This document shows positions 24,097 to 54,600 of a DNA stretch of 64,000 nucleotides, in pieces; the first letter of the stretch is position 1, and every line of letters starts with the position of its first letter. The stretch covers positions 20,405,910 to 20,469,909 of the forward strand of contig NC_134031.1 of assembly GCF_964204645.1 (NCBI RefSeq), written 5' to 3'. Position numbers and translations under genes: made by a program. This stretch comes from Tubulanus polymorphus. Lineage: Eukaryota > Animalia > Nemertea. The notes beneath the pieces were generated by a model that was given only the letters and a program-made list of their open reading frames with translations, ran no database searches and had not been told where the DNA came from.

Positions 24097-24990
24097 TTTT
24101 TGTCGAGCGTTCAAGCCGAGTAACACAGAAAATATGAGCCGCCCATACAACTATTCCAGCTGCTTCAAGAAATATTTATCATCACCAGGAAAAAAATTCA
24201 ATTAAAAATGGGCTTCTCAGAAATATCATATGATTTCTTCAAACGCTTATGTAAACATGTCAATTAATCATCCACAAATTACATAAGAAAATCATTTTGT
24301 ATCGCATCTCTACAAATCTGTACAGCATCGAAAAGGGATTATCATCAGGAGCTCTATGGAATAATAGCACATTCAGTCAGGTTAATTCGGTACAACCTAT
24401 GAGCAATTATCTATCTTTAGATAATTGCTCGTAGGTACAACCTACGGTAGTTCGTAAGCGCCTGATCTCGTGTCAACGCGGCTATGGTTCCTTTCGCAGT
24501 CGTGTATTATATTAATTCCATAGAACTCCTATGATAATCCATTTCGAAAGCAAAAACGAAATGGTTTCTTTTTGTTTTTGCGCGCCAATATTTTTTTGCG
24601 CGGTAAGATTTGTTTTGGTGCGCTTGCGCGGAGGATGGAAAAATATTTATATGTCTCGAATCACCCACTATAAATCAGAAACATGCAAAATATTTTATGA
24701 AGGTATGGATTTATTCGGGGGTGTAGGCCTGACACTACCTACGACAATTTGTTAAATCAGCGCAATTTTTTGGGGGGCAACTTTTCATTTTGTATTGACA
24801 AAGCTACTTTCGGTAATTATGAGCTCCCGAAAGCAGCAATTCGAAGTCGATATCAGCAAGTTGTTCATAGAAAATGCTGAATCGCTCTTCTTAAATTGGT
24901 TTCAAACGACCGTTGTTATTAGAAATCAATTTTGAGGCTGAATCCCATCGCAATTTTGACTGCAAAGATTGGCCGACGCAACACGAATCA

Positions 24991-28898: not shown

Positions 28899-30200
28899 CT
28901 CAAAGTCGATATCAAAACCTTGTTGTGGCAAGGAAAAAAGATCTGTACATTAAGTATGACCCTCCAAACGCTGATGTTTCTCTTTTGTTTTGACACGTAG
29001 CAAACGCTTTTTAATAAATAGGGGCGGCATCATAGGGGGGGGGGGGCAGGTAGAGGGAGCAATTATTGCTTACAGGTTTGTATATGTAAATACAAACATT
29101 ATAGTTGCTTTGAATTATTCTAACTACATAATAACAAGTTCCACGAAGACTACGGCCGAAAACGAATTGGTAAAAGTTAGGTACTTGCCCCCACTCCACC
29201 ATCCAAACAATCAGTCGACCTATATTGAACTTTTTGTACAAGTACCTTTTACATTCGCCACCAGTTTAACACGACTCCTTCCAATTCTTTTCATTATTGT
29301 ATTGCTTAGAATTTTTATAACCTTATCGCACGAGTTGTTTGTCAGCAGTTTTATCTTATTTCATATTGAGCTTAGCGTGTCACGAGGTCGAACAAACTAG
29401 CTCACTAGGTGCCATAACCGAGATATCGAAACGTTTTTACTGTAGCTTCCTAACGAGAATTTTATCTATCTTTTTGTTGCACCCAGATATTTAATCATTT
29501 AATAAATGAACTTTCTGCGTTAAGAAATCCCACGGAAAAATAATTCATATTCATGTTTATCGTTCTTCTCGACGGCAGCCATATTTCAGTGTGTGAATTC
29601 AAATTCACCGTTTTTCTCGAGGCAGCTTCATCTTTCTGATCTTTACCATTTGGCAAAAATTTACCGAATCTGGGAGGCAGTTACGTACGTATCAATTTCA
29701 ACACAATACTACGATGAAGTCAATACGCGAATGAAGTCCAAGACTGCAGACTCCTGAGTCAAATCATTGGAACTGAACTAATTTCCACTTGAGAGAGAGA
29801 GAGAGAGAGTCAAGCGTAACTCAGAGCTTTGAAACTTGAAAAGAAATAAATATAAAAAGAATAAATTTCTAGTATTCATAACAATTTCTTTAATATTCAT
29901 TGAAACTAATTTTTCATATTTACAAAAATTACTACTGATGAGACACTAACAGTAATATTCTTTTGCAGAGGGGGGCTATACTGTTAAAACACTAGGTGGT
30001 TTTTCCTTCACAACCGTAGCACATACGAAGTCTCGGCACTCTTAATCGCAATTATTTGTTCACTTAAATACGCAATCAGGTATGTGCATTTTTTTAACTT
30101 TCCAAAAATAATTTCCACTGCATAAGGAGAGCGACAATAGACTAGGCGAAGAATGAACAGCATTGAAAACCTAATCCCATAAAACGGGATTTTGGACGAT

Positions 30201-31650: not shown

Positions 31651-34600
31651 TCATAACTGCGTTGAATCCTGTAGTCTCGGCTGCTGATCCCGCGGCGCGG
31701 CGTCGTCGTCAGTCGTGGACAACGTCTCAATTTTCAATATCAACGCGTCCGTATCGCGCGGCGACGATGGTTGAAGTTCGCCCTTATAGTCAAAAGATGG
31801 CGCCGCGTCCGACAGCTTGATCGAATTTTTTAACGCGCCGTTTTTAGCGTAACCGTTCGCTAGGGTATGTTGTTGTTGTTCGGGCGACGGTATATCCACA
31901 ACTGTTGACTGACTCGGCGCGATTGCCGGCAGAAATTCGTTCTTCGTGAGTTCCGCTAAACTCAGTACGGATTCGCTGATCGGTGGCCAGTCAGGTTCCG
32001 ATTTTATCTCCTTTTCGATGACCTTGTGTTTGACCATCGTGTCCGGCAAACACTGCTCTTTCGTTTCGCGCCATTTTCGTCTGAGACGCACGTTGTCGAC
32101 CAGGAAACTCTGAAAACAAGCAAATCAAACGTATTTTTACCGCTTGAAATGGAAAATTGCAAAGAGCTCGCGACCATCCTCAAAGCAAAAAGAATGGCTT
32201 AATCATAGCATACCTCGAGTATTAAAGAGGCCAGGAAATTGGCGGCAGAAATTCCAACTAGAAGAAGTCGAAACTCGATAGACTTCGGAGGCAACAACTG
32301 AAAATCAAGAAATTGTAAGATTTCATCAGTTTATCATTTCAGGGTGGGTACTTTTATTTCATTTACTTTATCCCCGACTATTCCCAGATATCTACGCTGT
32401 TTTCCCTAACTTGATCTTGTCAGAATCCAAACAATAAGACATTGATTGTTTGCTTATACATGCGACCTATCCGTTTCAACAAATTTCCCAGACTTATCCC
32501 TGATTTTCGAATAAGTGGCCACCCTGATTACGCTAAATCCAGTCAAACTTGAAACTACACGCATTTTTTCATTTCCGATGCTCAACGCAAAGATCTACCG
32601 TACATGAATGATTCGGGCAGCTGAACACTTACCTCTATGAATGACATGAAGAATTCAGCGGGGTAAATAGTGAGATAAGCAGTGAACGCGATAAGTATCA
32701 CTAGATTCGCTAAAAACCAATCTGAAATGAAAAACACATTCGCTAAAATCCTTCAAGAAAAATTAGCAACCAGGCTTATGGCAAATGAAAAGGGGCTCAA
32801 GATTATGGACCAAAAATTACATTCACACGGCTGGAAAATGCCACAGGACAATCATCTTGAATGTGATTGACGTATGACAATAGAATACTTACAGTTAGTC
32901 AATATAGATTTCCGATACGGAGTGCCTTTTGAGAAAACAATCGCCAGTGTTATATACTGGAAACTGGAAACGCAGAACAACGAAAAGTTCTCGTGACTGG
33001 CGTATTCTTCCTCGGCATTCCGTACAAATGGCACATACCTGCAAATAACAAAATCACTGTCAATGCAAACCTGTACATCTGGAATATTTCGAATCAAAGT
33101 TTCACGAGTATTTTCTTACAGATAGATGAACCGAATTCATTGAAAATTATTGCAGAAAAACCTTAGGGTATCATTAACAAGTCTGTAAAATATCTAAGGA
33201 AAAATTCACAAGTAATGTGAACTTTCGCACTTTCAAAACAGCATGTTACTAATGCATTATCAAAGCAACTTTAACTCAAAATGGTTAACTCTAACCAACT
33301 CTTCAGTAAATTAGCCCTGTATCATTTATACATGTAAGTCTATTGAATGCTATTATTTGTCTGAAGTCTGTGTATCACATACAGTTTATCGCCTCTATAA
33401 CTTACCAGGGTTGAGCTAGCACAAAATAATAGGTGATGACTTGAAACAGTAATTGCACTGACACTTGTATAATCAGTGATATGATCGGGGCGCTGCTGAA
33501 CAGACTAACTAACGGTGGTTCTCTGGATAGAAACGGATAGGCAGCCGTTCTGCCAACTGAAATGAAGTCGAACTAGTTGAAGTAAATATTGTAATCGTAT
33601 ACATTTAAAAATATTAGCAAATTTGGTTTTTCATAGACGAGTCTAATTAGTTTGACGAAAACAACCAGGGGCCAGTTGCTCAAAAGTTGTTAAAAGATAA
33701 CCAGCCATTAAATACCATAGAAACAATGAAATCTCAATTGTCACCATATCGACTATCCACTGATTAACTCTAGCCAACTTTTGAGCAACCGACCCCAGGG
33801 ATTGAAGTAAAAACTGAAAGAAATACATCTAAGTTTTTGAGAATGTCTCATACGATGAGTCATAGATTTGAGACGAAACGTCAAAATTCTTAGTTTTTTC
33901 CTTCAATCGAGAGTTTTATCGTTAACACATTAGCCACGAGATATAACGACATCTGTTACACTTACACGTTATACTAAGTGAAGTCAGCAAAATCAAGTCG
34001 ATGTATAAGAACTCGAAATCCGTCAGATTTGCTCCGATCTGAAAAATGAAATAGAAAATTGTGAAAATGTTCACATTTATATAGAGATGATCGGTATTAT
34101 TCCAGTCCAAATACAAGTAAGTATAGACTGGATGAACGGCATTCAGTTGGGAATATCATAGATCCAAATATATGGGTAGATATTCAATTTACAACACTTG
34201 TCAATTGTACACGGACTCAAATGCCTTACAATTGGGAATACCCAATTGTCCCTAAATCCTGTTCGCGAAACTTACCCAGTATAGAATAAGTACAGTAACA
34301 AACTGGGTTAAACTGTAACAGGCGATGTACTTGAATATACCGAATGATGTGACCAATGAAGCACGACCCTCTCTGAAGAAAGTAAGCGTAGACGATATTA
34401 GAACTTTCACCAAATGAACAAGACGCATGAACAATGTGACGGCAATCAATAGAGAATCCCACAATAATAGCGAAAATAATTTACATCCCGAAAATGTTTC
34501 CAAGTGAGCTATTTCATTATTTGACGTTTCAACTGTATTCTAAATAGTCATCTTCAGGAATACTGAGGATTCCTGAAGATGAAGACTAGAATATATACAT

Positions 34601-37600
34601 TTTCGGTCTTTATATTATAAAGGTTTCCGCTGCATTCGCAGTTCTTTATCGTGAGATTCTCTATAGAAAGATGATTGAATAACGCGTCTTACTTGATGAC
34701 TGTGGGCACGCAGTTAATGTTAGCTTCTGTAGATGTGAACGGTGAGGCGACCGACGCCTCCGCTTCCGATAAGGAGATACCGGCGTGAGCTGTTTTCAGC
34801 GCGCCGCAATCATTAGCTCCGTCGCCGCACATACCGACGTAGTAACCTAACTCCTGCAACGACTCGATCAGTTGAGCTTTCTGATCAGGCGACATCCGAG
34901 CGAATATCGTTCCGCGTACGACTAACTGGAAAATAAACGATGGATCGGATGTGAGATAATGATCGAGGAATACAAACGTCAGTTATCAATCTGCAGCTTC
35001 GAATTTAGACAATAAATCATTTGTTTGCATTATGTAAATACAGCGCGTACCTTTGGTAACATATCAGCGAAATTGTCTTTAATTACGTCCCATGATTTTC
35101 CGGTTAAAGCGAAATGATAATGATCGTGTTTACTTTCGTACTGCACTAGAGAACTCTTCTGCAAAATATGAACGATAAATTCGTACAATTCATAAACTGA
35201 CAACAACTTTAACTCCACAATTCAAAAAGTTTGTCGCGAAAAACACTCAAATTCAGAACCCAGTTGAAAGTTGGTTAGCACAACTTGTCCAACAGTTAAC
35301 TTAAAACCAACTTTTGAGCATCTGGCCCTTGAAATTAATAGATTTCCAGAGATGGAAATAATGGCTCTGACTATTTTGAAAACGACCCCCTACGGTAAAT
35401 CTTGCTTTGATAACGTCAATAATATAAACAATTAAAAGCTGAATAGATGTAGTCATTGATATGATATCGTCAAACGGTGACTTAGTTTTCAGCTTACCTT
35501 ATGAGTTCCTTTCAACTCTTCCACCGTAATGTTATCTTCTGCGTAGACCCATTCGACATCTGCTGGCTGACCTTGTACTGCTGGTTTCGCGTTGACCAAT
35601 ATCACTTTATCACCGGGCTCGACGATGTGACAATCTCGCGCTACGCTGAGCGCGGTCAAAATGTTGTCACCTTCAAAAAATTTTAGAAAAATTTCATTTA
35701 CGCAAGATGAAAGTCAGTGGCAAGCAGTAGCAGAAAGTAGATAATTGTTCCCACAGTTACACGAATTCAAAACTACCCAAGTATTTTAAGGGTGATTTTT
35801 TCGATTTTTTGAATGCTACGGGATCATTGACAATCCACGGTTCGCAAAATTTCGAGACCACTATTCGCAAAATTTCGACTTAAACTGCCACTGGTTTCAC
35901 AATATCAAATAAGTTAGATATATTAGAATAGAGTACAGTACCTGTAACCATCACACTGCGTATTCCAGCCTTTGTTAGTGTATTGATAACCGGTTTACTC
36001 TCCGGCTTCAGCTTATTTACCATAATAATCAATCCCAAAAATATCAGATCCTTCTCGACGTCTTTCCTGAAAATACATCCGAAATTAATTACACAACACC
36101 ACAGGTCACTGAGCACCGGTGCATGCTACTGAGCACCGGTGCATGCTTTCAATAAGCATCCTAGAAATCATAAGTATATCCCCGGTAGGGATTCGAACCT
36201 GATGGCATCGAGACTCACCACGGTACGAAACCCTGCCACACTAGATAGAGTGGTTAGATATGCCATTATAGGTCCGATCAGAAATCATGTTTCATCTTAG
36301 CCCAGGTTCGTGTAAATAAATCTTAGTAAACTTATATCATACCTTTCAATTCGTTGCACTTTAACGTAAGAAAGTTTCAGTGGTTTCCAGGCGAGGGCGA
36401 TCACTCGGTAACCTTGCTGCGTGTAATTCGTTAAAACATTGTGGAAATCAGACGGAACTGAAAAATAATTCATAAATCAATCGGTCACCATACGATAGTA
36501 AACTCATCCTCTCCTGGGTCCAGTTCCACAGTTCCGAGTTAAGATTAAACTCTTAGTTAACTCTAACTCACGACTGTGGAACTGGGTCCGTAACTTTGAC
36601 TCTAGACTTTAACTCAGAGTTAACTCTAACTCACGACTGTGGAACTGGGTCCTGGTGATCGAACAACAAATAAACGTCAACAATCAACACTTCCGTACCT
36701 GTTTCTGGTTTTGAAAGCGAAGCGATCATCTCCGGTGAGCCTTTAGCGTACAGCGTGAAACAGTTCTCACCGAGCGTGCGAGTGATGACAGACATTCTCT
36801 GTAAACTCGACGAGAAGGTGAACTGTCGAATGATTCCTATTTCATGCATACCGACAGACGGAATTCCCTACGAAAATGGAGAAAATCTAAATTACATTTT
36901 ACCATATTGGGAAATACCATCTCAAATTGTCCAAACTGCTCAAGCAGTTACCCCCTGTTACGCCAAGTCTCACAATCCGTCTACCTACCATTGAATCAAT
37001 CGATTCTGAAGAACTGATTATATCTGGTTTCTTCGGGCGAACGACCGACGGCATTATCACATCAAACTTTGTGCTGTCTTCGCGAATTTCCTCGAATTCC
37101 TGCAACAATAACATAAACATTGGTTATAGACCTGCTACAAGACATAGACATTATACCAGGACCTGATTCCACAGTTACGTTATGATTTAGAGTTAACTCA
37201 TTGAATATGTACTTATTTTAACTCTTAAAACAGTTAACATCGAAGTAATCAAATCACATTCCGCATTCCATTGCTCAAAGCATTTCAGGTACTCAACACT
37301 TACCCACTGAGTGGCTTCAAACATTTTCAAATCAAGGGGATCGCCGCTTAGTACGTCATCGATGATCGTTAATGAATGACAAGTAGCCATAACGCTAAGG
37401 AACGCGCCTTTAGGCAACAATGTGCAATCCTCGAGCAACTCTTTAAACCTGCAAAAACATTTAAATTCGATGATATTCTTAAACGATAGAAATTATATGA
37501 ATTATGCAGTAGATGGTAAATTAGAGTAAATTATCGAAAGAGCTCAAACTGAATAAGAGTGAAATATGAAACAGTAGGGAATTGATACTGATGGTGTACA

Positions 37601-40600
37601 GTATATTGTAACAAAGCTTTCTACTCTATAATAAATCGCCCACAGCATTTACCTCGCTTTATCATCAGTTTGTACGGCACCATACATATCTAAACCATCT
37701 TCAGTTAAAGTACCAGTCTACAATAAGAAGTGTATGATAAGTTTTTGAGAAATGGTTACAGAGTTGTACCAGAAATTCAAAGTCCCTATGAATTTTTGCT
37801 ACGGTCTCCGGTGTCTGGTGCATTAACTTATTTTTCATACATAATTTTACATACCTTATCAAAGCAGACACAGTTGATGGTACCGCATACGTTTATGCTA
37901 CTCGGACTAATACAGAATACGTTCTGCATTGTCAGACGTCTTTGCGCGAAAACTGTGCCGACAGTCAGAGCAGCCGGTAGAGCTGGCGCCACTGTGATCG
38001 TCACTAAGTCCAATCCACGCAATATCATATGACCAATGGTCTCACCTTGTATCGACTACGAATAGAAATATAAAATTCAGGTCGTAGAATATGAATGAAT
38101 TGAACTGTTGATTCCGATCTGCTCAACTACGGTCGGGATATTCAGATGTAAGAAATACAGCTAAGGGCCAGCTAAGCTAACAATCTACATGGATAACTTA
38201 CTGGTACTCAAGAAATGCATTAGTCAGGAAGTTACTATATCGGCTATATTGTCATCCCGTGAGTGTAAATTTAAGGAAGTGTCAACTTACCATGATTATG
38301 ATAGTAAATAAGAATCCCATCGATGCGATGCAGGCAAGAAATCCAACAAATTTATACGTATCTTGATTGAAACGGAAATCGCAAGGTTTCGGGTACAGTA
38401 TAGATCGTACTAGTTCACCTTTAGCCGTCATGAATCCTGCAAAACCATGGAACAACCATGTTCATGAAACAATTCAACAATTCCAGGGACTGATTGTATC
38501 AATTGCACTTTGAATGGGGCACCGGCAACGCCTACTGTGGCAAGCGGAATTCCACCATTATCCGCCGGGTGATCAGAATCAACAATCGGAATGAACGTAC
38601 CGGTTCTCAGAACGACGGCTTTAACTTTCTCGCTGCCGTAGTAACGCGTCTGTATAACCTTCGTACCGCAGAATAGAACGTGCTTCGAATGTTCTTTCAT
38701 GTTGAATTTCAAGTGCGTGTCGACATTTCGAATGTTTGGGTTCGGAAGCGGAGTCTTTGTCACCGGAACGCTTTCACCTAGAAGAAAACAGAAAGTTGTC
38801 ATCAGGGTTCCAGAAGAGTTTGAGGTTTCAAGAGAATTAAGCTGTTAAACTTTCCAATTTTACACACTTAAAGGAGAGCGATGAGGAGAATGATGACGAA
38901 CCTGTTAACATACTCTCATTGACAATACAATTACCACTGATCAGTACTGCATCGCAATGCATAACACATCCATCACGCGGAATCACTATCAGATCACCGG
39001 GTACTAACATATCAGACGGAATATCCATATACTCTGTAAATGAATTCAAGACATTCATTATGAATTATACATCAACCTCTTGAATATCTAATTCAACCCT
39101 AGGGCTTTAACTGCTTATAGTCAAATGAGCTACAACAAGTTCAAGTTAAACGGCTCTTATCAAACCAGCATTTGATATCTAGGCCTATAAGTGCGTACCT
39201 GCAGATCTCAGTACTGTAACTATACTAGACGATTGAATAGTGTTTTTCAGGGCATGCTGCATCTGTTTAGAGAAAAGAAATATAAATCATCAATCTTAGA
39301 GGTCAATCGTTTTTTTCACAATGCTTAATCAACACTGGTAACCCTTAGATCCGATCAGAGTCCAGATAGGTCCATATCCGAACAAAACAAGAAGATCTAA
39401 GACGATTTATGCGTTAAAACCACAACTCTGCAACCAAACCCAGTGAACTTCAGAAGGCGGTGCCTAAATAGTATCAGATTTGACTCCAGAATGAAACTGA
39501 ACTTCAACTCTAGAAAATTTCCAATCTTAAGGTCAAGAAAACTGACCTTTCTTGTTTGGTAAATGCCGGTACTGATCGAGATGATCGATATTAATACTAT
39601 GCACGTAGCGTAGGCTTCATACTCATCGCAATACCACAGAATTATACTAAATATCTGGAATATGTAGAACGGGTTCAATATCTGAAATACGCAAAAAAAT
39701 CAAACAAATTTAATAACAATGAAACATCAGACATTCATCAGACATTCATCATACATTCATCAGACATTCATCAAACATTCATCAGACATTCATCACAGTA
39801 GGAATATTTCATATTATAACATTATACGCTTACATCTTTGAAGAGTAGTTTGATGATGGGTGTGATTTTCACGTCTATGCTGTTACCACCGTACATGAGA
39901 AGCCTGAAGATGAGAATTTCAAACGTTATTCTCGCAAAGAAAAAACTCAAAGATTACACATGAAGGCCCAGTACAGCCAACAGCGAGACTAAACCCTAGG
40001 GAGGGTTCCAAGGCAGTTGAAATAAGTAAATCTGTTAATTCTTAATTACTAAACGAATTTCAATCACACATACAACTAGGATGAGAACTTGATGATACTT
40101 TCTTACTGACCGTTTTTGCTGTTCCCATTGACTTAAACCATCGCTGTTTTCGTGGAAATAATAGCAATTTCGATTATCTTCTAATCCCCTAAAGACAAAG
40201 CAAAAACCATTTGATCAAATTATAATGTATTGCTCAATACCTGCGTATTTGCTCAATTATTCACTTACTTAAGCTTTTCAAATCGGTTTTCCGAACTGTT
40301 CCAAGTATATTTCAACTTCTTATTCATAAAATAACTAATTAACGAATCGTCCTAAAATACAAAACATGAACTGCTTGAATTATTACGGAACAAAATGACA
40401 TTCGATATCATCAATGTCTCAATACTTCAAGTAGAATGTTATTTTCTGATATATAAGAACGTAATCGTGATTAAATGCAGAAAGCAAATACACGATGTAG
40501 CCTATGTTTGACATTTGATCGAGTGCAAATACTCATTACAATTAATTAATCACACTCAGTAATAATGGAGAACTCATTAGTAAAAGAAAAGACAACGGCA

Positions 40601-43600
40601 TAATTGGCAGAAAGTCGATATTTAATATATAGCCTACTACACCACGACAGAGGTTTATAATTCACAAATACATTACACATAGAATAGTATTAGATAAAGT
40701 GTAAATCCTTAAGTACAACAACCTGTAGTGTTAGCATTAAAAAAAAACAAGCCTATCACTAAGCTACAAGCCAAAACTCTCCAGATGGCTTGAATTTCAT
40801 TAAAATACCGAAATCTGGATATAATGCAGCATATGGAGATATAGCATATAAGTGAAACCTTCTTAAAAGAGCATCCCTATTAGACATGTCCTCGTATGAG
40901 CGAACACAAGAGGAGATAATTATCAACCCTTAATGCTACCATTGGCCGTTTTTATCCGATCAAACCCGTTAATTATGCCCTATCCCATTTGAGTGTGAAG
41001 CTTTGCGACATGTTGATATATGGGCGTTTTAAGGAGGTTTCACCATATACATGTTTTACAGAAAAAAGCAAGAACAACGTGAGTCTGAGGCACTCAGCAC
41101 TATGTGAGTCTGAGGCACTCAGCACTACGTGAGTCTGAGGCACTCAGCACTACGTGAGTCTGAGGCACTAAGCAATACGCGAGTCTGAGGCACTCAGCAC
41201 TAGGCAAGTCTGAGGCACTCTGCACTACATGAGTCTGAGGCACTCTGCACTACGTGAGTCTAAGGCACCCTGCACTACGCAAGTCTGAGGCACTAAGCAA
41301 TACGCGAGTCCGAGGACATCAGAGAGCGAATAATAGAATGGAATGTAAAATTCATTAAGAACCAGAACCGACATAAAATAGGGACGCGGGAAATAAGAAT
41401 TTTCTTTTGCGTTTACCCATAACACTCGCTGACTACAATTTTCCAAGTAAAAGAAAATAGAATATTGAACATTGAAAACTAACTACAGCAACAGAACGAC
41501 AAAAAACCAAAATGCCGACAGAAATGTGCAAGGATATGCAGTTGAATACCTCTATAATTACAGAATTGCAAGACAGCAATCGAAAAGAAGCATTCGCTTA
41601 AATGCAAATAATTTTCTGATGGTAAGTTTAACCAGTGGACTAGTCGACTGTACGGTATATCTACTGAACTAAAATACTAGGTTGACACCAATATGTTAGA
41701 TTGGCTTTGGAACCTAAGAGTCTGGTTTCAAATCTTAAGTGATTGGCTACGTAACCAAAGCTAACTATGAATCGTAGAGAGTAAAGATTTAGGCCTATAT
41801 GAAGAAGTGCAAACAAAAGATGGCTGGCAAAATAGTTGCGTTACAAAATATGTTTCGTGACGTTAACACAAATTTGTCCGATTGCGAAAGTAAATGCTCC
41901 TTTTAACCGCGCAGCATGCAAACGGAAAACAGAACACGGAACCACAGAAACATGAGTGAGATATGAACATACATTTTGTGGAAGACGCAGATGATGTAAA
42001 TGATGAAATGGCTGATCGTAAAAATCATCCGATCGACGATGATGATGACTGATTATAAACGGTTCGGTCGGACCGGACTCCGTTGTTGATTCGGGCTCCT
42101 GAAGGTGTCGCTGCAGCTGCGTCCAAACAAACGAAATAATGGTTATGCACGTTTAAATACAAGTCACAAGTTTCCAATGACGAGTCTCGCTGTTTATGTT
42201 TTGAATTGTTGAAAAAAGGCACACGATCGAAAGAAAGGACTATTAATGTATCTCAACATTTCTACTCAAACACTATAAAGCCATTTCAGGGTGACCAATT
42301 AACTTGATCAACACAGTCAAATCAGGAAAAATTGACGGAAACTGTCTGATCATACATGCTATCTAACAATCTCAACAAATTTCCCTGATATTTTAGATTA
42401 TCTTTTCTTTTTTTTTTACAAAATTCCCTATACATTCCCAGGGTTTTATTAAGAAAAGAAAATTCCCTGACATCTTGATTTCCCTGGCTTCTTCTTGAAG
42501 TGGCGCCACCATGCATTTTCATAACAGATTCTATATCCAAAATGGATTGTAAAAATAACTGTTTGGGGAAATGAAATGTTCTGAAAATGGTTCATATGAT
42601 AGCATTAGAGTGGAAACATTACGATACTCGACAAGGCTTTTCTTTTAATCGTGCGACCCTTTTCAATTTGAAGATCAAAACTAACATTCACGACCACTTC
42701 GAACATTGGGAGTGCGCAAAAAATCAATAATAGATCATCCATGTGCGATCGAAGGAGATTATAATAGAGGTATTAATTAGAGAACGTTGTGGTTAAAGAT
42801 AAAAGCATTAACTATATATATTTCTATCCAAATCACTGTGCGATAATCGGAAATATCATTTTCATTCCAATAAATTCATATTTTCTATCGATTCTAATTT
42901 ATCGAAATGTCAAAGTTTTGAAAGAACTGAAGCATTATGTATCCTGAAAAAAATAATATTTTCTCGAGCAACGCATAAAACCTGTGTACGCATACATACC
43001 TTCGAGTTGTTCATAAACTTTCCATTTGAATATTGCTGAAATTTGGTTGATAAATGATACTTTAAATCATGTGCAAAGCGATAGGTTTTAAGAAAATTAA
43101 CATAGCCTAATTGGAAGAAATTTTGTCTAAATCATATCATATTTCAATATGGCAATGTATCGGGGTCAGCAGTTATTAGTGAGGATTTCATAGTTAAAAC
43201 TTCTAAAATGAAATAACTTCACTCACTAACTAACACTGTTCAGCATTTCTCTTTTCAGTAATTTCATCCTTGGGGTAAAAATAATAATTTTTTTCATATA
43301 ATCAAGACTTGTTCTACCAGGCGAAGATTTCGTAAAAAGATGTAGGCCCCTATATATTTTTCTCCACAGAAGCAGCTAAATGTAATGATTGTCTTCAAAA
43401 GCAATTTAAGGTACGCAAAGCTGTTTCTAGGAAAACTTGAATTAAGACCTAGAGCTATTTGATTTCAAAATGTAAAATTAAGTAAAATTGCGACCGACAA
43501 CAATACATAGAATAGGACCTGTTACGTGGTTATGGCAAAAAGAGTTTTTAACTCTGTTATGGATTTCAGATCAGTTATTTTCGAATGTCTAATCGGTTTA

Positions 43601-46600
43601 GAGGGCACAATTACAAAGCACGAAAATGATATACGGGATTGTTCCGGGACAATTGAATAACTACTTCTGTAATCATCAGAAAGCGTTATATAATAGGCCT
43701 ATTAGGCAAGAAAAAAACACAAATCATTTATGAAAGCATTGCAAATGAAATACAATGAAACTGTGTGTACCTTGCTCAGAATGGTGATCTGCGACTGAGT
43801 TTCAACATCGGAATTGAAATACTGCGGACAACAATGAGCCTTTGAACGCATTATTTTCACTCTGGAAGTCAACAGAAGAACAGTCATCGGTTAGAAATAG
43901 AAATACAGTATAAGGGAGGTTCAGGTTATGTTCACTATAGAGGTGTTAGTTTACTGTAGGGAGGTAACATTTTAGATTTTGGGACCAGCGTTCATTTAGG
44001 AAGGTGTTCGTTATAAGGAGGTCTTACTGTATGTACCGGGAAGTACATTCAGAGTGTACAGTTTCACCGGTCGTGTAGTAGACACCTATTTCAGGTACTT
44101 TTTTTTCAAAAAATTACGCCGAACATTATAAACAATTGCTCATAGACAAAAAAAGAGACATCAGTTGTGACACAGCTAGTTTGACTCTATTTTAAATCTA
44201 TTGATGCCGAGCCTTTTTCACGCGCTGATAATTATAAATTCGTACTCTATGAAAGAGGATTAACATCTTATTCATCCTACATTTAATACATAATCTCCCC
44301 ACATACAACATACTGGGAAACAGATGGTTAAGACTAAAACATATTCATTTTCACATGTTTTTTAGTCGATGCAGGTGGGTGTAAATATGTGTACTCTATA
44401 AAGTTCAAAATATGCGAGAAATTCTCTTTTTGAATGAACACGTTTTTTATCGCACATTTCTTTCGGTCAATTCAGGACTTATTGGATAATTTCCAGAATA
44501 GTGGCTTTCATAGATAGATTAGTCTCTATCTAAATTCCTGGCTCAGCAGTTATACAGTCATGACCTAAGTGCAAAGAAGGCTCAAATATCAACACGGGTC
44601 ATTAGTTGATAGATCGGTTATAGAATAAAGATGGTCTCAAGACTGGTTTTAAATCTAGGCCACGACAGCAGCTAGTCCGAGGATCTCACATTGAAACGTA
44701 CCTGGTGCCATCTCGCGTGGTTACAATCACATTCTCCACGAAATATTGTTCGTACTGGTCCTAAAAAAAAACATGGAAATAATCACCACGATAAACAAAG
44801 CACTTCGGAGACCATAGTTCCTACAGATAACAATTCAGAAACGTTGGAGATTTTTTAGTTGAGAAATTGACCGACCTTTAGCAGCACTTTTTCGGCGCAA
44901 TCTAGAGGACATTTCTCGTGCGTGAAATACAGCATCCATTCGGGTTTCCAGTGGAATACTAAACGCAATAAACCGACTGTGAGAACAATGACGATCCACG
45001 TCAGAATACGATACAAACCAGACGATCGAAATCCTTCAATCACCTGAAATATAGTTTAAAAGAAAGAAAGCGATTTATAATCGAGAATTCATCAGCTACT
45101 GTAGGAGTCGCAGCCGCTTTTATTTAACTTTCACCCAGACTATTCCCTGAAATCTACGTTGTTTTCACGAACTTGACCTGCTAAGAATTCGATCAATCAA
45201 ACCTTCAAGACGGACGGAAACTGTTTTATTTTAATGTAACTATCTGAACGAGTTTCCCTACTTTTCAAAGAAAAAAAAAATCCCCTTACTTTTCACTGAT
45301 TTCATGGTAAATGATTTCTAATTTCACCAGGTAAATGGTGCCACCCTGTGCTGTAACAAGTTTTCAAACAATCAAGCACGAAGTGACATTGAAACGAATG
45401 TTACATAGGGCCATCGGAGCAGGTCCGATATGACGACCTCCGGTCTGACAAATAATTACCCAAATCATAATCTAATAAATTTCCACTCAAAAACATATTC
45501 GATCAACATCAGCTGAAGTGTATCATTAAAATGCATCTGAGAGCACCTTATTTTCAACATTTTTCAGCGGAGGTTAACCCCGACTTTTTTAAAACATAAG
45601 TGATCACTTCAAGTAAATGAATTAGGGCAAAACATGTAGAATTTTATGTAGGAAAAGTAGATAATCGAGAATCACATGACAAAATCGCTCTACAAATGAC
45701 TGATGAAAAAGATAACAGATTATTATTTTCGACCTTGCATTTAAGTCTTCAGACATCACAAGATCTAGTAATAAATCATATAGCCTATGAATGAGTGACG
45801 GAACGTCTATTATTTTATCAGAAACAGTTCAAAGTGTTTATAACCTGGAAAGACAAGATGACTTTTAGACACGACGGAACATAACAAGGTTGAATTCAAT
45901 GATTTCTCCAAGGACGGTTATGTTCACATAGTTCACACAAACCCACAATAAGAATGAACATAAGAACGTTATTCGACACATGATGCCATACTACACAGTC
46001 TTAATTGATTAATAGATAAAACCTACAATCAGAAGAAAAACAAGACTATCATAGTAGTTGAACAGGATGGCCATTGTTATACGACTTGACTTGATTTGTT
46101 TTCCCTGATTTTACCTGTTTAGAATAGATTTACACTTACGCAGGCATCTAACTATTTGAACAAATTTCCCAAACTTTTCCCTGATTTTAAGCTTCCAAAA
46201 ATATTTCCATAACTTGACAAATTTTATAAAGGCACGAAAATTCCCCAACTTTTCTCTGATTTCCAGGTAAGTGGCGCCACCCTGTTTATGGACAAAGTAG
46301 GCTATTTTGCCAGGTAAGTTTAGACAGCTGAAATTTATGCGGTTTTTCTTCCTGATCGTGGGTTTTGTTTCATTTCATAATCTCTCCTGCGAGTCTCAAG
46401 CCTATACCTAATACATGTTGGCTATATAAAATCTAACTGTAAGTCAGGTCTGCGATATTACAATCAGGTTTGCATTGAATAAATTAACATAATAAATCGA
46501 CCAAGTCGCATAACTTGAACGTTTTGCGCATTCATTAGTCCGCAGCTTAGTCAGATTGCTTCATAGAAAATTTTCATGAATGTAATTTTTACGAGGCCTA

Positions 46601-47491
46601 CCGTAGTTATAAATAATTTCACAAAGCTCATTCATGACAGCTTAATGGAGGGCTGCAACACAAGAAGTTATCCCACCAGATGGCGTGACGAGCCCTCGGT
46701 CTTACGTTATCAAAATAAGCTCATTTTCGATCAACTTTAAATGAATTTCTCTCCGTAGTAAAATAAAAGACTAATTTCTTCTTACCATTTGATCTTCTTC
46801 ACCGATATTAACATACTGTTTGTTTGGATCGACAGGTGGAGGTCCTTTCTTTACGTTATCCGGAATTTTATTACCTGCGGAAAATCATGAAATTTCGAAA
46901 AATTAGAAAAAAAAAAACAATAAGGTTATTTTTCATGATGGTAAAGGGAGACTCGGGCAATCCCTTAAAATTGGTACACGTGTTCAGCCCGGTGCTATGA
47001 ATTCACGACAAATGAAAACATAGCTTCAATGCGCTCATTTTATTCACACTAATGATTAACATTCAAAAAAGGCCAAAATTTAGTTCGACTTTTGCAATTT
47101 GTCGGATATTTCTACATCAAACTATGTAAAAGGTTAGGTCTGAACATACAGAACTATTGCGTTAGGCCTATAGTTCTATGGTCTGAATACCAAATGACGT
47201 CAACGATGTCCGGTTTGGAAAGAGGAGATTAGCCCTATCTAAATATAATTCATAAAAAGCTCATCCCAAGAAATGATTTCTGACTACAGTTATGGGTATT
47301 TGGGGGTTTACGAGGGTCAGTCCTTTTGTATCAAAATCAGTCAATTAACTTACTTAAATTTGATTGATGATTGAATTTTAAGTGTCGAGCGTCGCCGGAG
47401 AAAAAGCCTTCAATTTTGTATCACAAATATTTCGCAGACGTGAAACAACAATCAACAACAGCATCATCCACTTACCTTTCCTTCTACACAT
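31651..47491 (-). CDS. ATP13A3: P5B-type ATPase, polyamine-transporting (ATP13A3-like), about 32 coding exons
   Basis: Start MCRRKG|NKIPD...[11 protein letters not shown]|VIEGFR. Motifs [41 protein letters not shown]|[43 protein letters not shown] and [10 protein letters not shown]; ends ...DSTQL*. Confidence 0.95.
33669..33795. mobile_element. Harbinger-type MITE (second internal subfamily), CAG TSD
   Basis: GGGCCAGTTGCTCAAAAGTTG / CAACTTTTGAGCAACCGACCC, with CAG on both sides. A degenerate relative lies at ~35258-35328. Confidence 0.7.
34449..34664 (-). mobile_element. Hairpin element with a partly degenerate hammerhead motif, in an ATP13A3 intron
   Basis: ATAGAGAATCCCAC...GTGAGATTCTCTAT termini; minus strand reads TATTC-CTGAAGA-T-GACTATTTAGAATACAGTT-GAAAC-GTC. 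Confidence 0.65.
36517..36651. mobile_element. Harbinger-type MITE with a duplicated right end, CTG TSD
   Basis: GGTCCAGTTCCACAGT ... ACTGTGGAACTGGGTC (present twice), flanked by CTG. A relative lies at ~55670-55764. Confidence 0.65.
39723..39795. repeat. 11-bp tandem repeat (ACATTCATCAG), about 6 copies
   Basis: Direct periodicity. Confidence 0.9.
41078..41314. repeat. 25-bp minisatellite (GTGAGTCTGAGGCACTCAGCACTAC), about 9.5 copies
   Basis: Direct periodicity, in an ATP13A3 intron. Confidence 0.92.
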
Positions 47492-47516
47492 TTTTGCAGT
47501 TTGTTTAGTAGGGACG

Positions 47517-47573
47517 TCAGCTAATATCGTCAATTTTCTGAAGGCACGATCGCTGGCGAAGCAACCATGCCAT
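47517..47573 (-). promoter_or_regulatory. Upstream ORF MAWLLRQRSCLQKIDDIS* in the ATP13A3 5' leader
   Basis: GAAATGG strong start context; 18 codons ending GAC GAT ATT AGC TGA; the stop lies 25 nt before the main ATG at 47491. Inclusion in the mRNA depends on the unknown TSS. Confidence 0.6.
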
Positions 47574-47607
47574 TTCCTCGTTTCATCTATTTACTCCACA
47601 TTAGCTG

Positions 47608-47617
47608 GTCATGTGAC
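47608..47617. promoter_or_regulatory. M-box/CLEAR-like E-box GTCATGTGAC upstream of ATP13A3
   Basis: Matches the MITF/TFEB-type TCATGTGA and differs by one base from GTCACGTGAC; it sits at the 5' end of an endolysosomal gene. Confidence 0.4.
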
Positions 47618-48679
47618 TGCCGAATGTCATTTATTGGGTTCGAATCCCCATTAGGCTTATTCTGCCGAAAATATTTACCCTAACTTTTTTCTTTAAGTCC
47701 TCCGTCGTGTTTTCTGTATCAAAATTTTTCGAAAAAAAATAAAAGGATTTTTAACATTTCTGTCTCAATTTCGGATCTAATTATTTGTAAAGGATTGCTT
47801 AGTTTTATCCATCATTTGTAAGCTTATTCACAATTCGCGCACTTTTTGACTTTTTCCTTACTGTCCAGCAAATTGTATTTTCAAGTTAGAACCAAATTAT
47901 CTTTATCTAGGTAATTTATTCAAAGCGTCCTTCACGGAATATGGCTTCATATATCACACAGTACATCTGGTATTGGCAATAGTAAATCACCTGTATGTCA
48001 ATAAGATTTTTCCAGTCAGATGTAGTTCCTTTTGCCAGCAATCCTTAGAAATGTAAACTATCATCCATTCCACATATGATCATATTGTATGATAAAATGC
48101 ATAAGGCCACAGGCCCATTGCAAAGATACATTCTGTAAGACTGGTACATGACATAAGTCCGTGTAGGCCTTTACATCTAATTGGTCATTTTAACAAGTGG
48201 AATACACCCAATAAATGAAAACACGGCAGGAATCTTTGCAACATGGCCTTGCCCAGGCTGCGATCAGCATCGGCATAAAACAACTAAAAATACTGATGTC
48301 TTATCATAAAAAAATCTTGTATTTCAATGAATATTATTGAAGGAGAGCATAAATACAAATAAAACTTTGTTAAATATTCACATTATCGATTTGATGATAT
48401 TAAGAATAGATTCGACACAACTGTCTGATGATGACATGGTAGTCAAAATCCACACAAGTAAAAACATGCAAAACGCATTACTGAACATGATGTAACTATT
48501 GAAGTGAAATGCATTCCATGATGTAACTTATATCGTCTGTCTTGTTTAACACAAATCAGCAAACAGCAACTTTTCCGTCCGTCAGATGTGATAGTGGTAT
48601 GGCGTTTCCGTCTGTCAGGAGATGTGATTGGCTAATGTTTAGTGGTACGACGTTTCCGTCTGTCAGGAGATGTGATTGG

Positions 48680-51600
48680 CTAACGTTTAGTGGTACGACG
48701 ACGACCCTTTGCCATGGTGCGACCAGATTTCGGAGTTCCCGTGGATCCTAGGCTAAACATATTCTGTCCACCTGAAAAGAACAATCATACAACATTCTGA
48801 TGACAGTAAAATTACTTTCCATTAATATCCAAAAGGTATAAGTCGACCACATTTAGTTTCATAGATAAAATGGTAGTTACCATTAATATTCTCGAAACCT
48901 ATTATGCGTACCTATGTGGTGGATGGGGGTGGTTAAAAAAGTTGCGTTCGAGGGAGGAAGGAGGTTAAAGAATAAGCTATTTTTTGCTTATGTACTTATT
49001 GAATGATCCCCAAGAACAAGATTTTCAGATTATTTACTAGCGCTAAACTTAATCCATCTTTTCAATTTCTGATGAAAGTTAACAGGTTATCGTTTTATCC
49101 TTGATTAGATATCTGTAGGTGTCACAGCAAGGTTACGATGACAGGCAAGGTAACTTACCAACACCGAAACCAGTACTAACTGCACCAAACGGTATAGAGG
49201 GTGCTGCAGCAGCGGCAGCGGTAAACTGAAACATACCTGGAGTACTTGGGGCAACTGCTGGGTTTGCTGCAAAATGAAATAAAAATATCCTTATACATTA
49301 AACACTTCTTCCAAATCCTAGTTCATTAAAAGTTGTTCGATGTATTCAAATGAAATTGTCTCTCTTAAAGAAGTTTTAAAGTTTCACCTAGAATGTTGAT
49401 TTTTTAAGGACACTGAAAATACATACACAGGGGCAGATTTAGGATCTGATTCAGGGAGAGTTGCACCACCAAAATAGGGCACATCATAAAGGGCACCCGG
49501 AAAGAAAGCTCAATCAACAACATAAACTGCACACACCGTGCACTTTCTCCTTTGATTCTCTGATTCTAACGAATTCTCTGGAGTCCTCAATAGTATGGAC
49601 AACACTCAGATGTTAAATAAGCAATTGATTTCGCTAATTTTCTTTAGATTGTGCAGGACAAAAAATGGGTCGTCTCCACAAAGACAATCAGCTTTGTGCG
49701 AAGCAGAGTCTACTATACAATGAATATTAAAAATTATATTTAGAAAATATCTACCTTAATCGCTGTGCTCATTTACTTACCAGCACCGAAATTGAAGCCT
49801 TGCGCAGAATTTCCAGCACCAAATGCGCTTGCATTCGATTGACCAAATCCACTTCCACCGCCAGCTGGTGCAAAAGGATTCGGGGTCGATGTCGATTGAG
49901 TGAAATTAAAACCTCCTGTATTTCCGCTCGGAGCTGGAGTCCCGAATGCCGGAGTAGCTGCAGTAGAACTGCCGAATGCTGGCACAGAATTTTGATTAGC
50001 GCTTCCAAATGCCGACGTCGAACTACCAAAAGCCGGAGTAGCGGAACCCGCTCCAAAAGCGGGTGTATTTGTGTTTTGCGTTGCTCCGAATATCGGTGTT
50101 TGAGCGGTTTGAGCGCCGAAAGCCGGCGCCGGAGACTGTCCAAATCCTGTACTCGTAGAAGAACCTGTTCCACCAAAAATACTACCACCTGTATTAGATT
50201 GAGTAGCGGTAGCAGCGGAAAAGTTAAATCCACTATTCGCGGCAGTTTTTGCTGTTTGTGCGAACGCGAACGGATTTGCATTCGGTGGAGGTTGCCCAGC
50301 TGCGGATGATGCCCCGAACGTTCCCTGTTGGGACGTTGCGCCGAAGTTAAATCCACTTGCTGAAGTTTTCGCGGGAGCACTGCTGCTGTTGAAACTGAAT
50401 GTTGACGCATTCTTAGATGAAGCCGCTCCAAAATTGAACCCGGAACTTGAGCCAGTTTTCGTTAAATTAGACGCAGCCGAATTATTATTTGTCGTCGAAA
50501 AGTTAAACACACCTGAGGGCGCCGTGCTTGCCGGAGGTGCTGAGAAGTTAAATCCACTAGATGGCGCAGTGCTTGCTGGTGGTGCTGAGAAGTTAAATCC
50601 ACTAGATGGCGCAGTGCTTGCTGGAGGTGCTGAGAAATTAAATCCACTAGATGGTGCAGTGCCAGCAGGAGGTGCCGAGAAATTAAATCCGCTAGATGGC
50701 GCAGTGGTAGCTGGAGGTGCCGAGAAATTAAATCCACTAGATGGCGCAGTGCTAGCTGGAGGTGCTGCGAAATTAAATCCACTAGATGGCGCAGTACTGA
50801 CAGCAGGTGCTCCTCCAAATATAAATGACGACTTTGTTTCAGTGGATGATGTTGGTTTCGCAGCTATAGATAGATTGATTGCCGATGATGCGGTTGTAAC
50901 TGTTGTCCCTGTTCCACCAAAAAAACTTTTTGATGACCCAAAAACTGATGAACTAGAAGTCTGTCCTCCGCTGAATGAGAAAGTACTTGATGGTGCTGCA
51001 GCTGTAGTTGTAGGAGCACCAAATGAAAATCCACCAGCAGATGGAACTGATGTAGTTGTGGTCGAAGGTGCACCAAATAACCCGCCAGTAGATGGCGCGG
51101 CACTTGTTTTGGTAGAGGATGAAAATGCACCACCTGCAGATGCTGAAGAACCAAATGAAAATCCGCCAATAGCTGGCCCTGCAGCGGTTGAAGCAGCTGA
51201 AGAACCAAATAAGAGTCCACCAGCAGCTGGTGCTGCAGCAGTTGCAGCAGCTGAATGACCAAATAAGAGTCCACCAGCAGCCGGTGCGGCAGCAGTTGCA
51301 GCAGCTGAAGGACCAAATGAGAGCCCACTAGCAGCCGGTGCTGCAGCAGTTGTAGCAGCTGAAGGACCAAATGAGAATGCCCCCGTAGCTGGAGTTGACA
51401 ATCCACCAGTTGATCCAAACGACAATGTTACAGGAGCTACAGATGCTGCACTCGTGGCTATTGTGTTCGATGCAAATCCTGCTGATGCTGTAGCTGCTGT
51501 TGAGTTCAGTGCAAACACAGAACCTGTAGTTGATCCTGTAGAGGAACTCGCACCTGCACCAAATATTGCACCAGCTGATTTAGATACTGAAGGTGAGAAA

Positions 51601-54600
51601 ATACCAGCAACCGGAGCATTCGAATCTCCTGATACCTGAGATGAGGATGCTGGCGTGGCTGCATTTGAATTGGTAGGGTTTGGTAAAACTAATGGCGAAC
51701 CAGTGTTTTTGGTAAGACTAATTTGGAATGGTGATGATGATACTGTAGTACTCGTCGACGCGGTGGTTGCTGTCGAAACTTTAGATGCCAGAACAGACAA
51801 CACGGATGGCTTAATTCCATTTCCAAGTACAGATAAGACAGACGTAACACTCGGAGAAGTTGAAGGACCACTTGAAGATGCTGTAAGAGAACTTGTTGGA
51901 GTCGGAGTGCTGATTAATGAAGGCAAAGACAAACTAGCAGCAGACGTAGGCAAAGTTGAAGATGATAAACTAATTGCTCCTAAACCATTCATGGATGATG
52001 TTGCTGTTTTAGAACCAGGTGATGCAACAGACAATGGAGTAGATGAACTGTCAGGAGCGGTGTTCGATGTTTGAAGAACTGAAAAGTAGAAGTACTCAAC
52101 AATAAGATATCTTGTCATTATTATCACTATAAGTACATGTTACTCAGTTCAAGCAGCCTATTGGCTTATATAGCTATGCTATATTAATTCCATTATACTC
52201 TATTTTTCTGGTCCAGTGAACACTGTGTACATTTAAAGACTAGTAGCGATTAATAGAATTATTGGAGTCAAATCAAGCTAAGCAGTCTGTCGGCTGATGC
52301 AGCTCTGGGGTTTTTTGATAACTTCATTATCTTTGATTTAACGAATGGCCCCACCACTTAGGGCAACCCTAACGGATCAAAACCAAGAATAGCTATGTAA
52401 TTAAGTAGCTGTAGTCCATAGAACATCCATACTAAATTTGGATATGATCTAATTAACACTGTACTTACCACTAGTCTTGAAAGTCAGAGTTGAAGAGGTA
52501 GCTGGTGCACTAGCCAGTATAGATGGCGCTGATAATGCTGATAGTATTGATGGAGTTGTGCCGGTGCTGCTCGTTACTGTTGTCACGCTCGACGATGAGA
52601 GCACATCAGGCTGGCGTTCAGCTATTCAACAAAGAGGTCAAACATTTCAGAAATATGAAAATAGCTGCGTTAATTCGGGAGAACGAGTCGACTCATTTTG
52701 GGCGTATGCTTACATCCTATACGCCTATTCTCTTAGGGTTTTGGACCTACGTATATACATTCATGTCAACACTGATCACCTGAGTGTTTTGAACATATTC
52801 ATAAGACCTTGCTGTTATGATGTTTCCCTGACATTCGTTAGATGTCGCTCTGGTCTTTATTCAGAACAGCCATGACACCCTTGTGATTTATTGAAACCCT
52901 AGAAACCCTGAACGCTCACAGAACATGCATGAGCATTATATAAGGTTATCTTTGATGGACTTCAAATCATTAGATAGTACACACTGTCAAAAACATACGC
53001 ATATCTATCTAGTCACTAGAATTCAATAATTGTATTTTTGATTTACCTTTTCCTAACATCGATTCGACGCGAGCTTTTGCTGCTAAACGATCCCTTTCTA
53101 TATTCTTCAATTCTAACTCAATCAACTCTTTCTTCTTTTCTGCGGGTAACTGAACAAAGTGAAATTCATTATGGAATGTAGAAACATATTTCTCGTATAA
53201 CCAGTTATACACATATATCTATTCAATAATGATAAAGAAGGCAAATATAATAAAAATACCTATACACTGTACGATATTAAGTGAAATTTTTATCTCTCGA
53301 CATTTCTTTGAACAAATAGGGGTTTTCCCATACTATCTTTCATTCTAACAAACATTTATTTCAGCAAATCAGTTTACGAAAAAACAATTGAATAGAAAAT
53401 AGAGCTAAAAAGCAATGATAATGCAGGTGTGGATCCAGCATTTTCAAAGTGGGGGTGCTACGCTGGTAATCCCACAGAAAAATTAGCCTAAATTAGGCAC
53501 TCATGATTATCTCATAAAGCCCTATCTTATGTGCAAAATGTACCATGTACTTTGAAATATAGCATTGAAAAACTGAAAATAATTAATACAAAGAACCTCC
53601 AGCACCCATAGTTACCCCCTGGATCAGTGGCTGTAATGGGGGTTTTCTTCCTTGCTGGTTCAAAAAGGCCGTACTACGCAGGTCCAGCAATAAAATCACA
53701 ATTTCAAATTACGTCAAATAAATATATAAAAAATATACGTTTATAAAGGAAATACTGAATTGAAATAGATACTTACTTCTGGTAGAGTTCTATTAAGAGG
53801 AGGTGATACTGTTTTCTGAGTAGATCTCACCAGTAAACCGAGAGGTGTACCGCGTGGTATCGCCGAGCCAACGCTCAATATTTTGGGTGGCGTTAATTTC
53901 GTTTGTGATGAAGGCGCTTTCGACGTTCCTACGTGGGTTTCTTTAGGAGTTTGACATTCAGTCTGAGTTTCAGAATCGCTAAAAAAAAAGATTGATCCCA
54001 TTGTGTCAATCATTTTCGATTAATTGATCAGAATATCATTGAAGATTTCTTGCTCAATTCTTATATTTATGATATTTCATACGGGCTTTAACACTTCTAA
54101 TCATAAACCCAGGATTAATACATGGAGCCATTTATAACTAAGTTTACTGATTAGGCCTGGAACCATTGTCGCATATAGAAAAACAATTTCCCCAAATTAA
54201 AAAGGTAGCAGAGTTATCTAGTAATATACCAAAATTAGAGGGATACAAAGTGCTGGAAAATGATTCTTTGAGTTCCAAGGAATTAAAACCACATAGATTC
54301 ATTCCTAACTAACGACAAGCTTCAAATCCATGATCTACACGATAAAACTAAACCGGCGTTTCTTACCCCTCATGATCTCTACGATAAAACCAAACCGGCA
54401 TTTCTTACCTCTGTAAAGGATTTTCTTCTGTATCTATTCTGATATCTGTTTCTCCTATAACGATATTCGGTCGTTTAACGCGAATATCGCGATCATCAAC
54501 ATTCTCTTTAATATTCTCCTAGTAAATTAGAAAATTAAATAACTATAACCTTTTACCGTTACCTACAGTCAAATGTTGCCACAAATATATTTTGTGCAAC

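What the first reader, a model, noticed from the sequence alone, without database searches (positions are those of the whole stretch)
47517..47573. MAGDIS-like uORF (ends D-I-S-stop) in the leader of a polyamine transporter: candidate polyamine-sensing translational feedback on ATP13A3
Seen: the strong-context uORF MAWLLRQRSCLQKIDDIS* ends GAT ATT AGC TGA, 25 nt before the main ATG. Established: the mammalian AdoMetDC (AMD1) uORF MAGDIS* stalls ribosomes at termination in high polyamines, and its Asp-Ile before the last residue is the sequence-critical part. ATP13A3/P5B ATPases transport polyamines, and the fungal polyamine transporter HOL1 is controlled by a uORF. I know of no DIS-stop uORF described on a P5B-ATPase. 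Inference: polyamine uptake is feedback-repressed at translation. Caveats: a 3-residue match is short and could be chance, and the TSS is unknown.
Basis: partly seen in the sequence, partly recalled or inferred. Interest (0 to 1): 0.85.

Follow-up and report, generated by a model that had tools for sequence, protein, structure and literature searches.

The report
Ser-stop uORF before polyamine pump gene
Ribbon worms keep a tiny reading frame just in front of their polyamine-import pump genes, and its end resembles the known polyamine-sensing stall peptides, which suggests (untested) that the cell makes less pump when polyamines are plentiful.

Summary
The uORF is there, on the minus strand (47573-47517): 18 codons ending D-I-S-stop, strong start context, 25 nt before the annotated start of a P5B (ATP13A3-like) ATPase of the ribbon worm Tubulanus polymorphus. 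The Lineus longissimus ortholog carries MAGCVS-stop 24 nt before its start (p=0.0002 against MAGDIS; 0.002 corrected). Owenia has G-D-I-C-stop at 25 nt but no in-frame AUG. Two further nemertean paralogs have AUG uORFs ending D-E-S-stop and G-P-S-stop at 17 and 29 nt. What is kept is a Ser-stop uORF about 17-29 nt from the start, not D-I itself: Lineus has Cys for Asp. Five molluscs and three arthropods lack it. No RNA data exist, so the 5' end is unknown; an E-box near -124 in four species puts it close to the uORF AUG, on either side. Best reading (0.45): a polyamine-sensitive termination-stall uORF giving feedback on uptake, like AMD1 and fungal HOL1 uORFs. Function is inferred only. I found no paper on a P5B uORF, and no earlier scan note on it.

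The parts
47517..47573 (-). uORF of the finding, 18 codons ending D-D-I-S-UGA, strong start context, out of frame with the main ORF
47530..47586 (-). overlapping uORF in another frame (18 codons, weak AUG 47586; inner strong AUG 47568); its UGA sits one base before the D-D-I-S frame
47587..47601 (-). 4-codon weak-context uORF, may lie upstream of the transcript start
47543..47571 (-). 12-bp hairpin (3 G-U pairs) over the first uORF codons; z -2.7 on a hand-picked 46-mer, no counterpart in Lineus or Owenia
47492..47516 (-). 25-nt spacer between uORF stop and main ATG (24 nt in Lineus, 25 nt in Owenia)
47608..47617 (.). E-box (CLEAR/M-box-like) 124 nt before the ATG; E-boxes at -120 to -126 also in Owenia, chiton, Pecten; probable promoter element
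   Evidence: null 1.3% for that window; window chosen after seeing the data
47476..47491 (-). first coding exon part (16 nt) of the P5B ATPase, GT donor at 47475; same 16-nt length in Lineus, Owenia, chiton, Pecten and the C7 paralog
46786..46874 (-). second coding exon
31651..45043 (-). remaining exons of the ATP13A3-like P5B ATPase (1343 aa in RefSeq model P0200)
47915..47920 (-). AATAAA, candidate poly(A) signal of the upstream FG-nucleoporin gene (stop at 48680-48682); bounds the promoter and leader
   Evidence: role inferred

Best explanation
An inherited regulatory uORF of nemertean (perhaps also annelid) P5B polyamine-transporter mRNAs that works like the AMD1 MAGDIS and HOL1 PS-stop uORFs. 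Shown: the uORF, its Ser-stop end and its distance to the start are kept in four nemertean P5B leaders. Inferred: the transcript starts a little upstream of 47573; at low polyamine some ribosomes pass the cap-near AUGs or terminate quickly and reach ATG 47491; at high polyamine termination at x-Ile/Val-Ser-stop slows, the stalled ribosome blocks scanning 25 nt short of the main start, and less transporter is made. The constraint seems to be on the last one or two residues and position, not on D-I strictly.
For: Lineus ortholog (sister to the window gene) has AUG-initiated MAGCVS-stop, strong context, gap 24; score against MAGDIS p=0.0002, 0.002 after correction for 13 leaders; Owenia p=0.0014; Fisher p=0.0008. 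AUG uORF ending Ser-stop 15-30 nt before the ATG: null 1.7%, seen in 3 of 4 other nemertean P5B leaders (binomial 2e-5; 0.002 for 3 of 15; post hoc window). Ser codon varies AGC/AGT and stop varies TGA/TAA. Tubulanus-Owenia spacers share length but no sequence (p 0.6-0.95). MAGDIS still stalls behind a 75-residue linker, so 18 codons is compatible (PMC7038982). Precedent on a transporter: HOL1 PS-stop (PMC11550727); PS-stop ends in plant AdoMetDC and animal ODC-homolog uORFs (PMC2811004).
Against: No RNA evidence. Asp is replaced by Cys in Lineus; from memory (Mize et al. 1998, not held here) Asp4 is essential in the mammalian assay. Owenia's D-I-C frame has no AUG in contiguous DNA. D-I codons are identical in all three species. 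Tubulanus-Lineus nucleotide identity runs past the stop. Chiton, Pecten, Solemya, oyster, cuttlefish, Daphnia, mite and bee lack it; oyster G-D-S-G-stop is only a weak echo. Two strong-context AUGs would repress heavily unless they are very near the cap. Only two nemertean species were available.
Confidence: 0.45

Rival explanations
1. Conserved but polyamine-independent uORF damping: a cluster of uAUGs 80-95 nt before the start simply keeps transporter synthesis low; the peptide end is kept by descent or weak constraint.
For: Strong-context uAUGs at -77 to -98 in Tubulanus, Lineus, Owenia and chiton with unrelated peptides; C-termini differ (DIS, CVS, DES, GPS); DIS-only test not significant.
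Against: Does not explain why Lineus matches MAGDIS at 4 of 6 residues plus a V/I swap or why the ends are Ser-stop.
Confidence: 0.2
2. The shared letters are a DNA/RNA-level promoter or leader element (initiator- or factor-site-like), the transcript starts near -30 to -80, and the uORF AUG is mostly not in the mRNA.
For: E-box at about -124 in four species suggests a start close by; 9 identical bases across the stop plus partial spacer identity between Tubulanus and Lineus; no synonymous change in GAT ATT; chiton has an initiator-like TCAGT at -36; a CRE-like hexamer overlaps the stop.
Against: Spacer similarity beyond the Kozak bases is weak (p=0.09) and nil for Owenia; no consensus initiator in the Tubulanus, Lineus or Owenia leader; in mRNA contig L042 a Ser-stop at gap 18 lies inside the transcript.
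Confidence: 0.2
3. Chance: short motifs picked after the fact in few, flexible comparisons.
For: Three-residue motif; several motif definitions were tried; 8 of 8 mollusc/arthropod leaders negative; only three species carry the signal.
Confidence: 0.11
4. Antizyme-like switch: ribosomes on the overlapping AUG uORF reach a UGA and shift +1 in high polyamine, adding a (D)-D-I-x-stop tail that stalls.
For: In Tubulanus, Lineus and Owenia an AUG uORF ends in UGA whose +1 frame reads D-D-I-S, D-I-L and D-I-C then stop; null 14 of 14,412. In Lineus and Owenia that D-I-x frame has no AUG of its own.
Against: [quoted passage not shown]
Confidence: 0.04

Closest known systems
Vertebrate AMD1 (AdoMetDC) uORF MAGDIS
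   Same: Ends D-I-S-stop; AUG-initiated; polyamine-pathway mRNA; Lineus homolog is a hexapeptide M-A-G-x-V-S; probably cap-near.
   Different: Different host gene (transporter), 18 codons here, stop only 25 nt from the main start, overlapping uORFs, Asp not kept in Lineus; stalling untested; no homology to the AMD1 leader claimed.
Fungal HOL1 PS-stop uORF (eIF5A/polyamine-controlled termination)
   Same: uORF on a polyamine importer ending in Ser-stop; feedback logic; Lineus paralog 2 uORF ends G-P-S-stop.
   Different: HOL1 is not a P-type ATPase (an MFS carrier, from memory); window uORF has Ile, not Pro, before Ser and a strong start context.
Plant AdoMetDC tiny/small uORF pair
   Same: An upstream uORF overlaps the start of the candidate inhibitory uORF (Tubulanus 47586 over 47573; Lineus -86 ORF stop overlaps the -63 AUG).
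   Different: Lengths and sequences unrelated; no penultimate Pro.
P5B ATPases ATP13A2-5 / CATP-5,6,7 / Ypk9
   Same: P5-ATPase domain, DKTGT, TGES, M4 PALP, M6 acidic residue; PDB ATP13A2 E 7e-260 versus P5A 1e-107.
   Different: M4 reads APALP instead of PPALP; no uORF control reported for the family in the library searched; 'ATP13A3' is an annotation label, one-to-one orthology not tested.

Membership tests
MAGDIS-type uORF (vertebrate AMD1) | C-terminus D-I-S-stop | tested here: met
MAGDIS-type uORF (vertebrate AMD1) | Six-codon uORF | tested here: not met
   18 codons; six in Lineus; N-terminal extension tolerated in vitro
MAGDIS-type uORF (vertebrate AMD1) | Asp-Ile kept in AUG-initiated orthologous uORFs | tested here: not met
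   Lineus C-V-S; Owenia D-I-C without in-frame AUG; molluscs none
MAGDIS-type uORF (vertebrate AMD1) | AUG about 14 nt from the cap, inside the mRNA | not testable with these tools
   no RNA run; E-box position is only indirect
MAGDIS-type uORF (vertebrate AMD1) | Polyamine-dependent, sequence-dependent stall at termination | not testable with these tools
   needs reporter, toeprint or Ribo-seq
MAGDIS-type uORF (vertebrate AMD1) | Lies on AMD1 mRNA | tested here: not met
   host is a P5B ATPase
PS-stop uORFs (HOL1, plant AdoMetDC, ODC homologs) | Penultimate proline, Pro-Ser-stop | tested here: not met
   I-S-stop in the window; P-S-stop only in Lineus paralog 2
PS-stop uORFs (HOL1, plant AdoMetDC, ODC homologs) | Leaky (weak or non-AUG) start allowing bypass at low polyamine | tested here: inconclusive
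   strong context at 47573; leakiness could come from cap proximity, unknown
P5B ATPase | PF12409 domain, DKTGT and TGES motifs, closer to ATP13A2 than to P5A | tested here: met
P5B ATPase | PP(A/V)LP motif in M4 | tested here: inconclusive
   APALP here, NPALP in Lineus, PPALP in Owenia, chiton, scallop, fish
P5B ATPase | Polyamine transport activity | not testable with these tools
   by homology only
Antizyme-type +1 frameshift site | ORF1 ending in UGA with a +1 frame continuing | tested here: met
Antizyme-type +1 frameshift site | Conserved shift-prone P-site codon | tested here: not met
   AAU, UCA, CGG; none in the known list

The most novel reading that the evidence does not exclude
Animal P5B polyamine pumps in nemerteans and some annelids are feedback-controlled by their own polyamine-sensing stall uORF, a family of Ser-stop peptides (DIS, CVS, DES, GPS) that bridges the MAGDIS and PS-stop classes and arose or persisted apart from vertebrate AMD1; in the most exotic form the D-I-x tail is reached by a polyamine-stimulated +1 shift (about 0.04).
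Probability: 0.4. Interest if true: 0.8.

Novelty: new variant of a known kind. Interest (0 to 1): 0.62.

Why it matters
Feedback repression of polyamine uptake in animals is usually credited to antizyme (PMC2811004), and I found no paper describing uORF control of any P5B pump. A cis-acting stall uORF would be the first translation-level sensor on an animal polyamine transporter, parallel to fungal HOL1. The natural series DIS / CVS / DES / GPS / DIC gives ready-made variants for testing what makes a Ser-stop peptide polyamine-sensitive, a point still open for MAGDIS. The reach is limited: not seen in molluscs or arthropods, vertebrates not examined.

Tried and rejected
RNA evidence: no RNA run found; the three runs laid are genomic, no splice joints; their second haplotype shows no listed change in 47468-47809, too little to count. 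N-terminal extension reading (I-L-A-D-V-P here, V-L-A-D-I-P in Lineus): rejected, the Lineus frame ends in a stop over the main ATG. Spliced leader using CTTCAG at 47544: weak pyrimidine tract and only a weak donor at 47861; not excluded. Conserved RNA structure: none. Metagenome scan gave only Daphnia, mite, bee and other insect loci, negative or without the first exon. Lamellibrachia: start not reliable; C-D-I-stop at gap 15 before a doubtful model start, not counted. Third Tubulanus paralog (C5): start uncertain, negative. L042 mRNA leader only 51 nt. Three look-ups returned nothing. HOL1 paper and the 2020 review were not held, so the Asp4 requirement rests on memory. Exact MAGDIS-coding pattern in the genome is at chance level. 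Per operators' rule I searched one exon by reference and left out any search with a self-joined spliced model; later searches used the database protein P0200. No human contig was fetched or compared; vertebrate leaders were not examined.

Full report
Observation. The stretch 47517-47573 read on the minus strand gives an 18-codon ORF ending K-I-D-D-I-S-stop. Its AUG has G at -3 and +4. Twenty-five bases after the stop is ATG 47491, followed by a GT donor after 16 coding bases; exon 2 (46874-46786) and exon 3 (45043-44876, PF12409) continue in frame. A database protein on a contig of the same length as the window's contig, P0200, matches the window exons essentially letter for letter and starts at this ATG; it is annotated as polyamine-transporting ATPase 13A3-like of Tubulanus polymorphus. 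Pfam, PDB and motif checks place it among P5B ATPases, with APALP for the usual PPALP.

Chance. Among 11,000 random ATG-anchored genomic windows, 6 had an AUG ORF ending D-I-S-stop within 60 nt. That is rare for one gene but would give several cases per genome, so conservation had to decide.

Is it in the mRNA? Unknown. No RNA run is on record; three runs laid on 44700-49400 are DNA. Indirect bounds: the upstream FG-nucleoporin gene stops at 48680 with an AATAAA at 47915-47920, and an E-box lies 124 nt before the ATG, matched at -126 in Owenia, -120 in a chiton and -124/-122 in Pecten (null 1.3% per leader, window chosen post hoc). This points to a short unspliced leader whose start lies somewhere after -115. 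The uORF AUG at -82 could be cap-near, as for MAGDIS (14 nt; PMC2811004), or just outside the transcript.

Related leaders. The first coding exon is 16 nt in Tubulanus, Lineus, Owenia, chiton, Pecten and a Tubulanus paralog, so these starts are comparable. Lineus longissimus, sister to the window gene in the tree, has an AUG uORF in strong context reading M-A-G-C-V-S-stop, 24 nt before the start. Owenia fusiformis has K-L-V-F-G-D-I-C-stop at 25 nt but no AUG in that frame; an AUG ORF beginning M-A-K and containing L-Q-K, as in the window peptide, runs one base out of register, and a splice acceptor-like tract sits at the same place. The Tubulanus C7 paralog has an AUG uORF ending C-D-E-S-stop at 17 nt (start inferred by me) and the second Lineus paralog one ending D-I-G-P-S-stop at 29 nt. 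Chiton, Pecten (only 373 nt to the divergent neighbour), Solemya, cuttlefish mRNA, Daphnia mRNA, mite and bee show nothing alike; oyster mRNA has G-D-S-G-stop at 21 nt.

Statistics. D-I-x-stop in any frame near the start has a null of 0.64% and is present in Tubulanus, Owenia (gap 25) and Lineus (D-I-L, gap 49), always with codons GAT ATT. An AUG uORF ending Ser-stop 15-30 nt before the start has a null of 1.7% and is present in 3 of 4 other nemertean leaders (post hoc). At nucleotide level Tubulanus and Lineus share nine bases across the stop and some spacer identity (local p=0.02; spacer without Kozak bases p=0.09), while the Owenia spacer is unrelated. So the signal is real but narrow: two nemerteans and, less cleanly, one annelid; position and terminal Ser-stop are better kept than Asp-Ile.

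Mechanism. Most likely (0.45) a polyamine-sensitive termination stall. Known steps: MAGDIS stalls at its stop in high spermidine, still does so behind a 75-residue linker, and loses the effect with I5L (PMC7038982; PMC7089771); HOL1 is repressed through a PS-stop uORF (PMC11550727). Shown here: the uORF, its end, its spacing and their partial conservation. Inferred: translation of the uORF, stalling, polyamine dependence and the effect on uptake. The chief weakness is the Cys for Asp in Lineus, since from memory Asp4 is essential in mammalian tests. Rivals: polyamine-blind damping by uAUGs (0.2); a promoter or leader element with the start downstream of the AUG (0.2); chance (0.11); an antizyme-like +1 shift into the D-I-x frame (0.04), whose layout holds in all three species (null 14 of 14,412) but whose P-site codons are not known shift sites.

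Comparison and novelty. It works like, but is not a member of, the AMD1 MAGDIS class (other gene, other length, Asp-Ile not kept) or the PS-stop class (no Pro). Searches for ATP13A3 or ATP13A2 with uORF terms returned only general reviews and a worm paper; the passages read describe no uORF control of a P5B pump. The library lacks most subscription journals. Earlier scan notes hold nothing on this element.

Method note. The spliced gene was searched by one exon, by reference; no self-joined model was sent to a search tool. No human contig was fetched or compared.

Noticed in passing
window 48590-48700 (-): A 48-nt unit repeated about 2.5 times copies the last codons and stop of the upstream FG-nucleoporin gene into its 3' UTR.
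   Followed up: no
window 48680-52139+ (-): Upstream gene is an FG-repeat nucleoporin with a basic C-terminal tail, Nup153/POM121-like; ends only 1.2 kb before the ATPase start.
   Followed up: partly
L010:8437-8496 (G000:C1, AMD1 leader): The genome's own AMD1 has a candidate uORF ending D-S-C-L-S-stop about 100 nt before its start, without the penultimate Pro reported for most invertebrates; its AUG may be intronic.
   Followed up: partly
window 47608-47617; L013, L015, L028, L041 promoters: E-box (CLEAR-like) at nearly fixed distance before the P5B start from nemertean to molluscs; suggests old TFEB/MITF/USF-type control.
   Followed up: partly
window 38000-38030 (-), P0200 residue 519-523: M4 signature reads APALP (NPALP in Lineus) instead of PPALP; a nemertean change in the substrate helix.
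   Followed up: no
L013:5924-5975 (Owenia): AUG ORF and G-D-I-C-stop frame differ by one base across an A4 run; possible assembly slip, splice site or decayed uORF.
   Followed up: partly
L044 (G000:C12 antizyme): The genome's antizyme has the canonical TCC TGA T shift site.
   Followed up: no
G000:C8:2425379-3892892: Eleven copies of one 21-mer coding M-A-G-N-I-S-stop clustered on contig 8, probably a repeat family.
   Followed up: no
window 4147-5094, 21123-22094, 24913-26058, 27066-28949: Three single-exon rhodopsin-type GPCR ORFs and an MFS transporter gene downstream of the ATPase.
   Followed up: no
L028:3627-4001 (Pecten): P5B ATPase and a DIS3L2-like gene start only 373 nt apart, head to head.
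   Followed up: no
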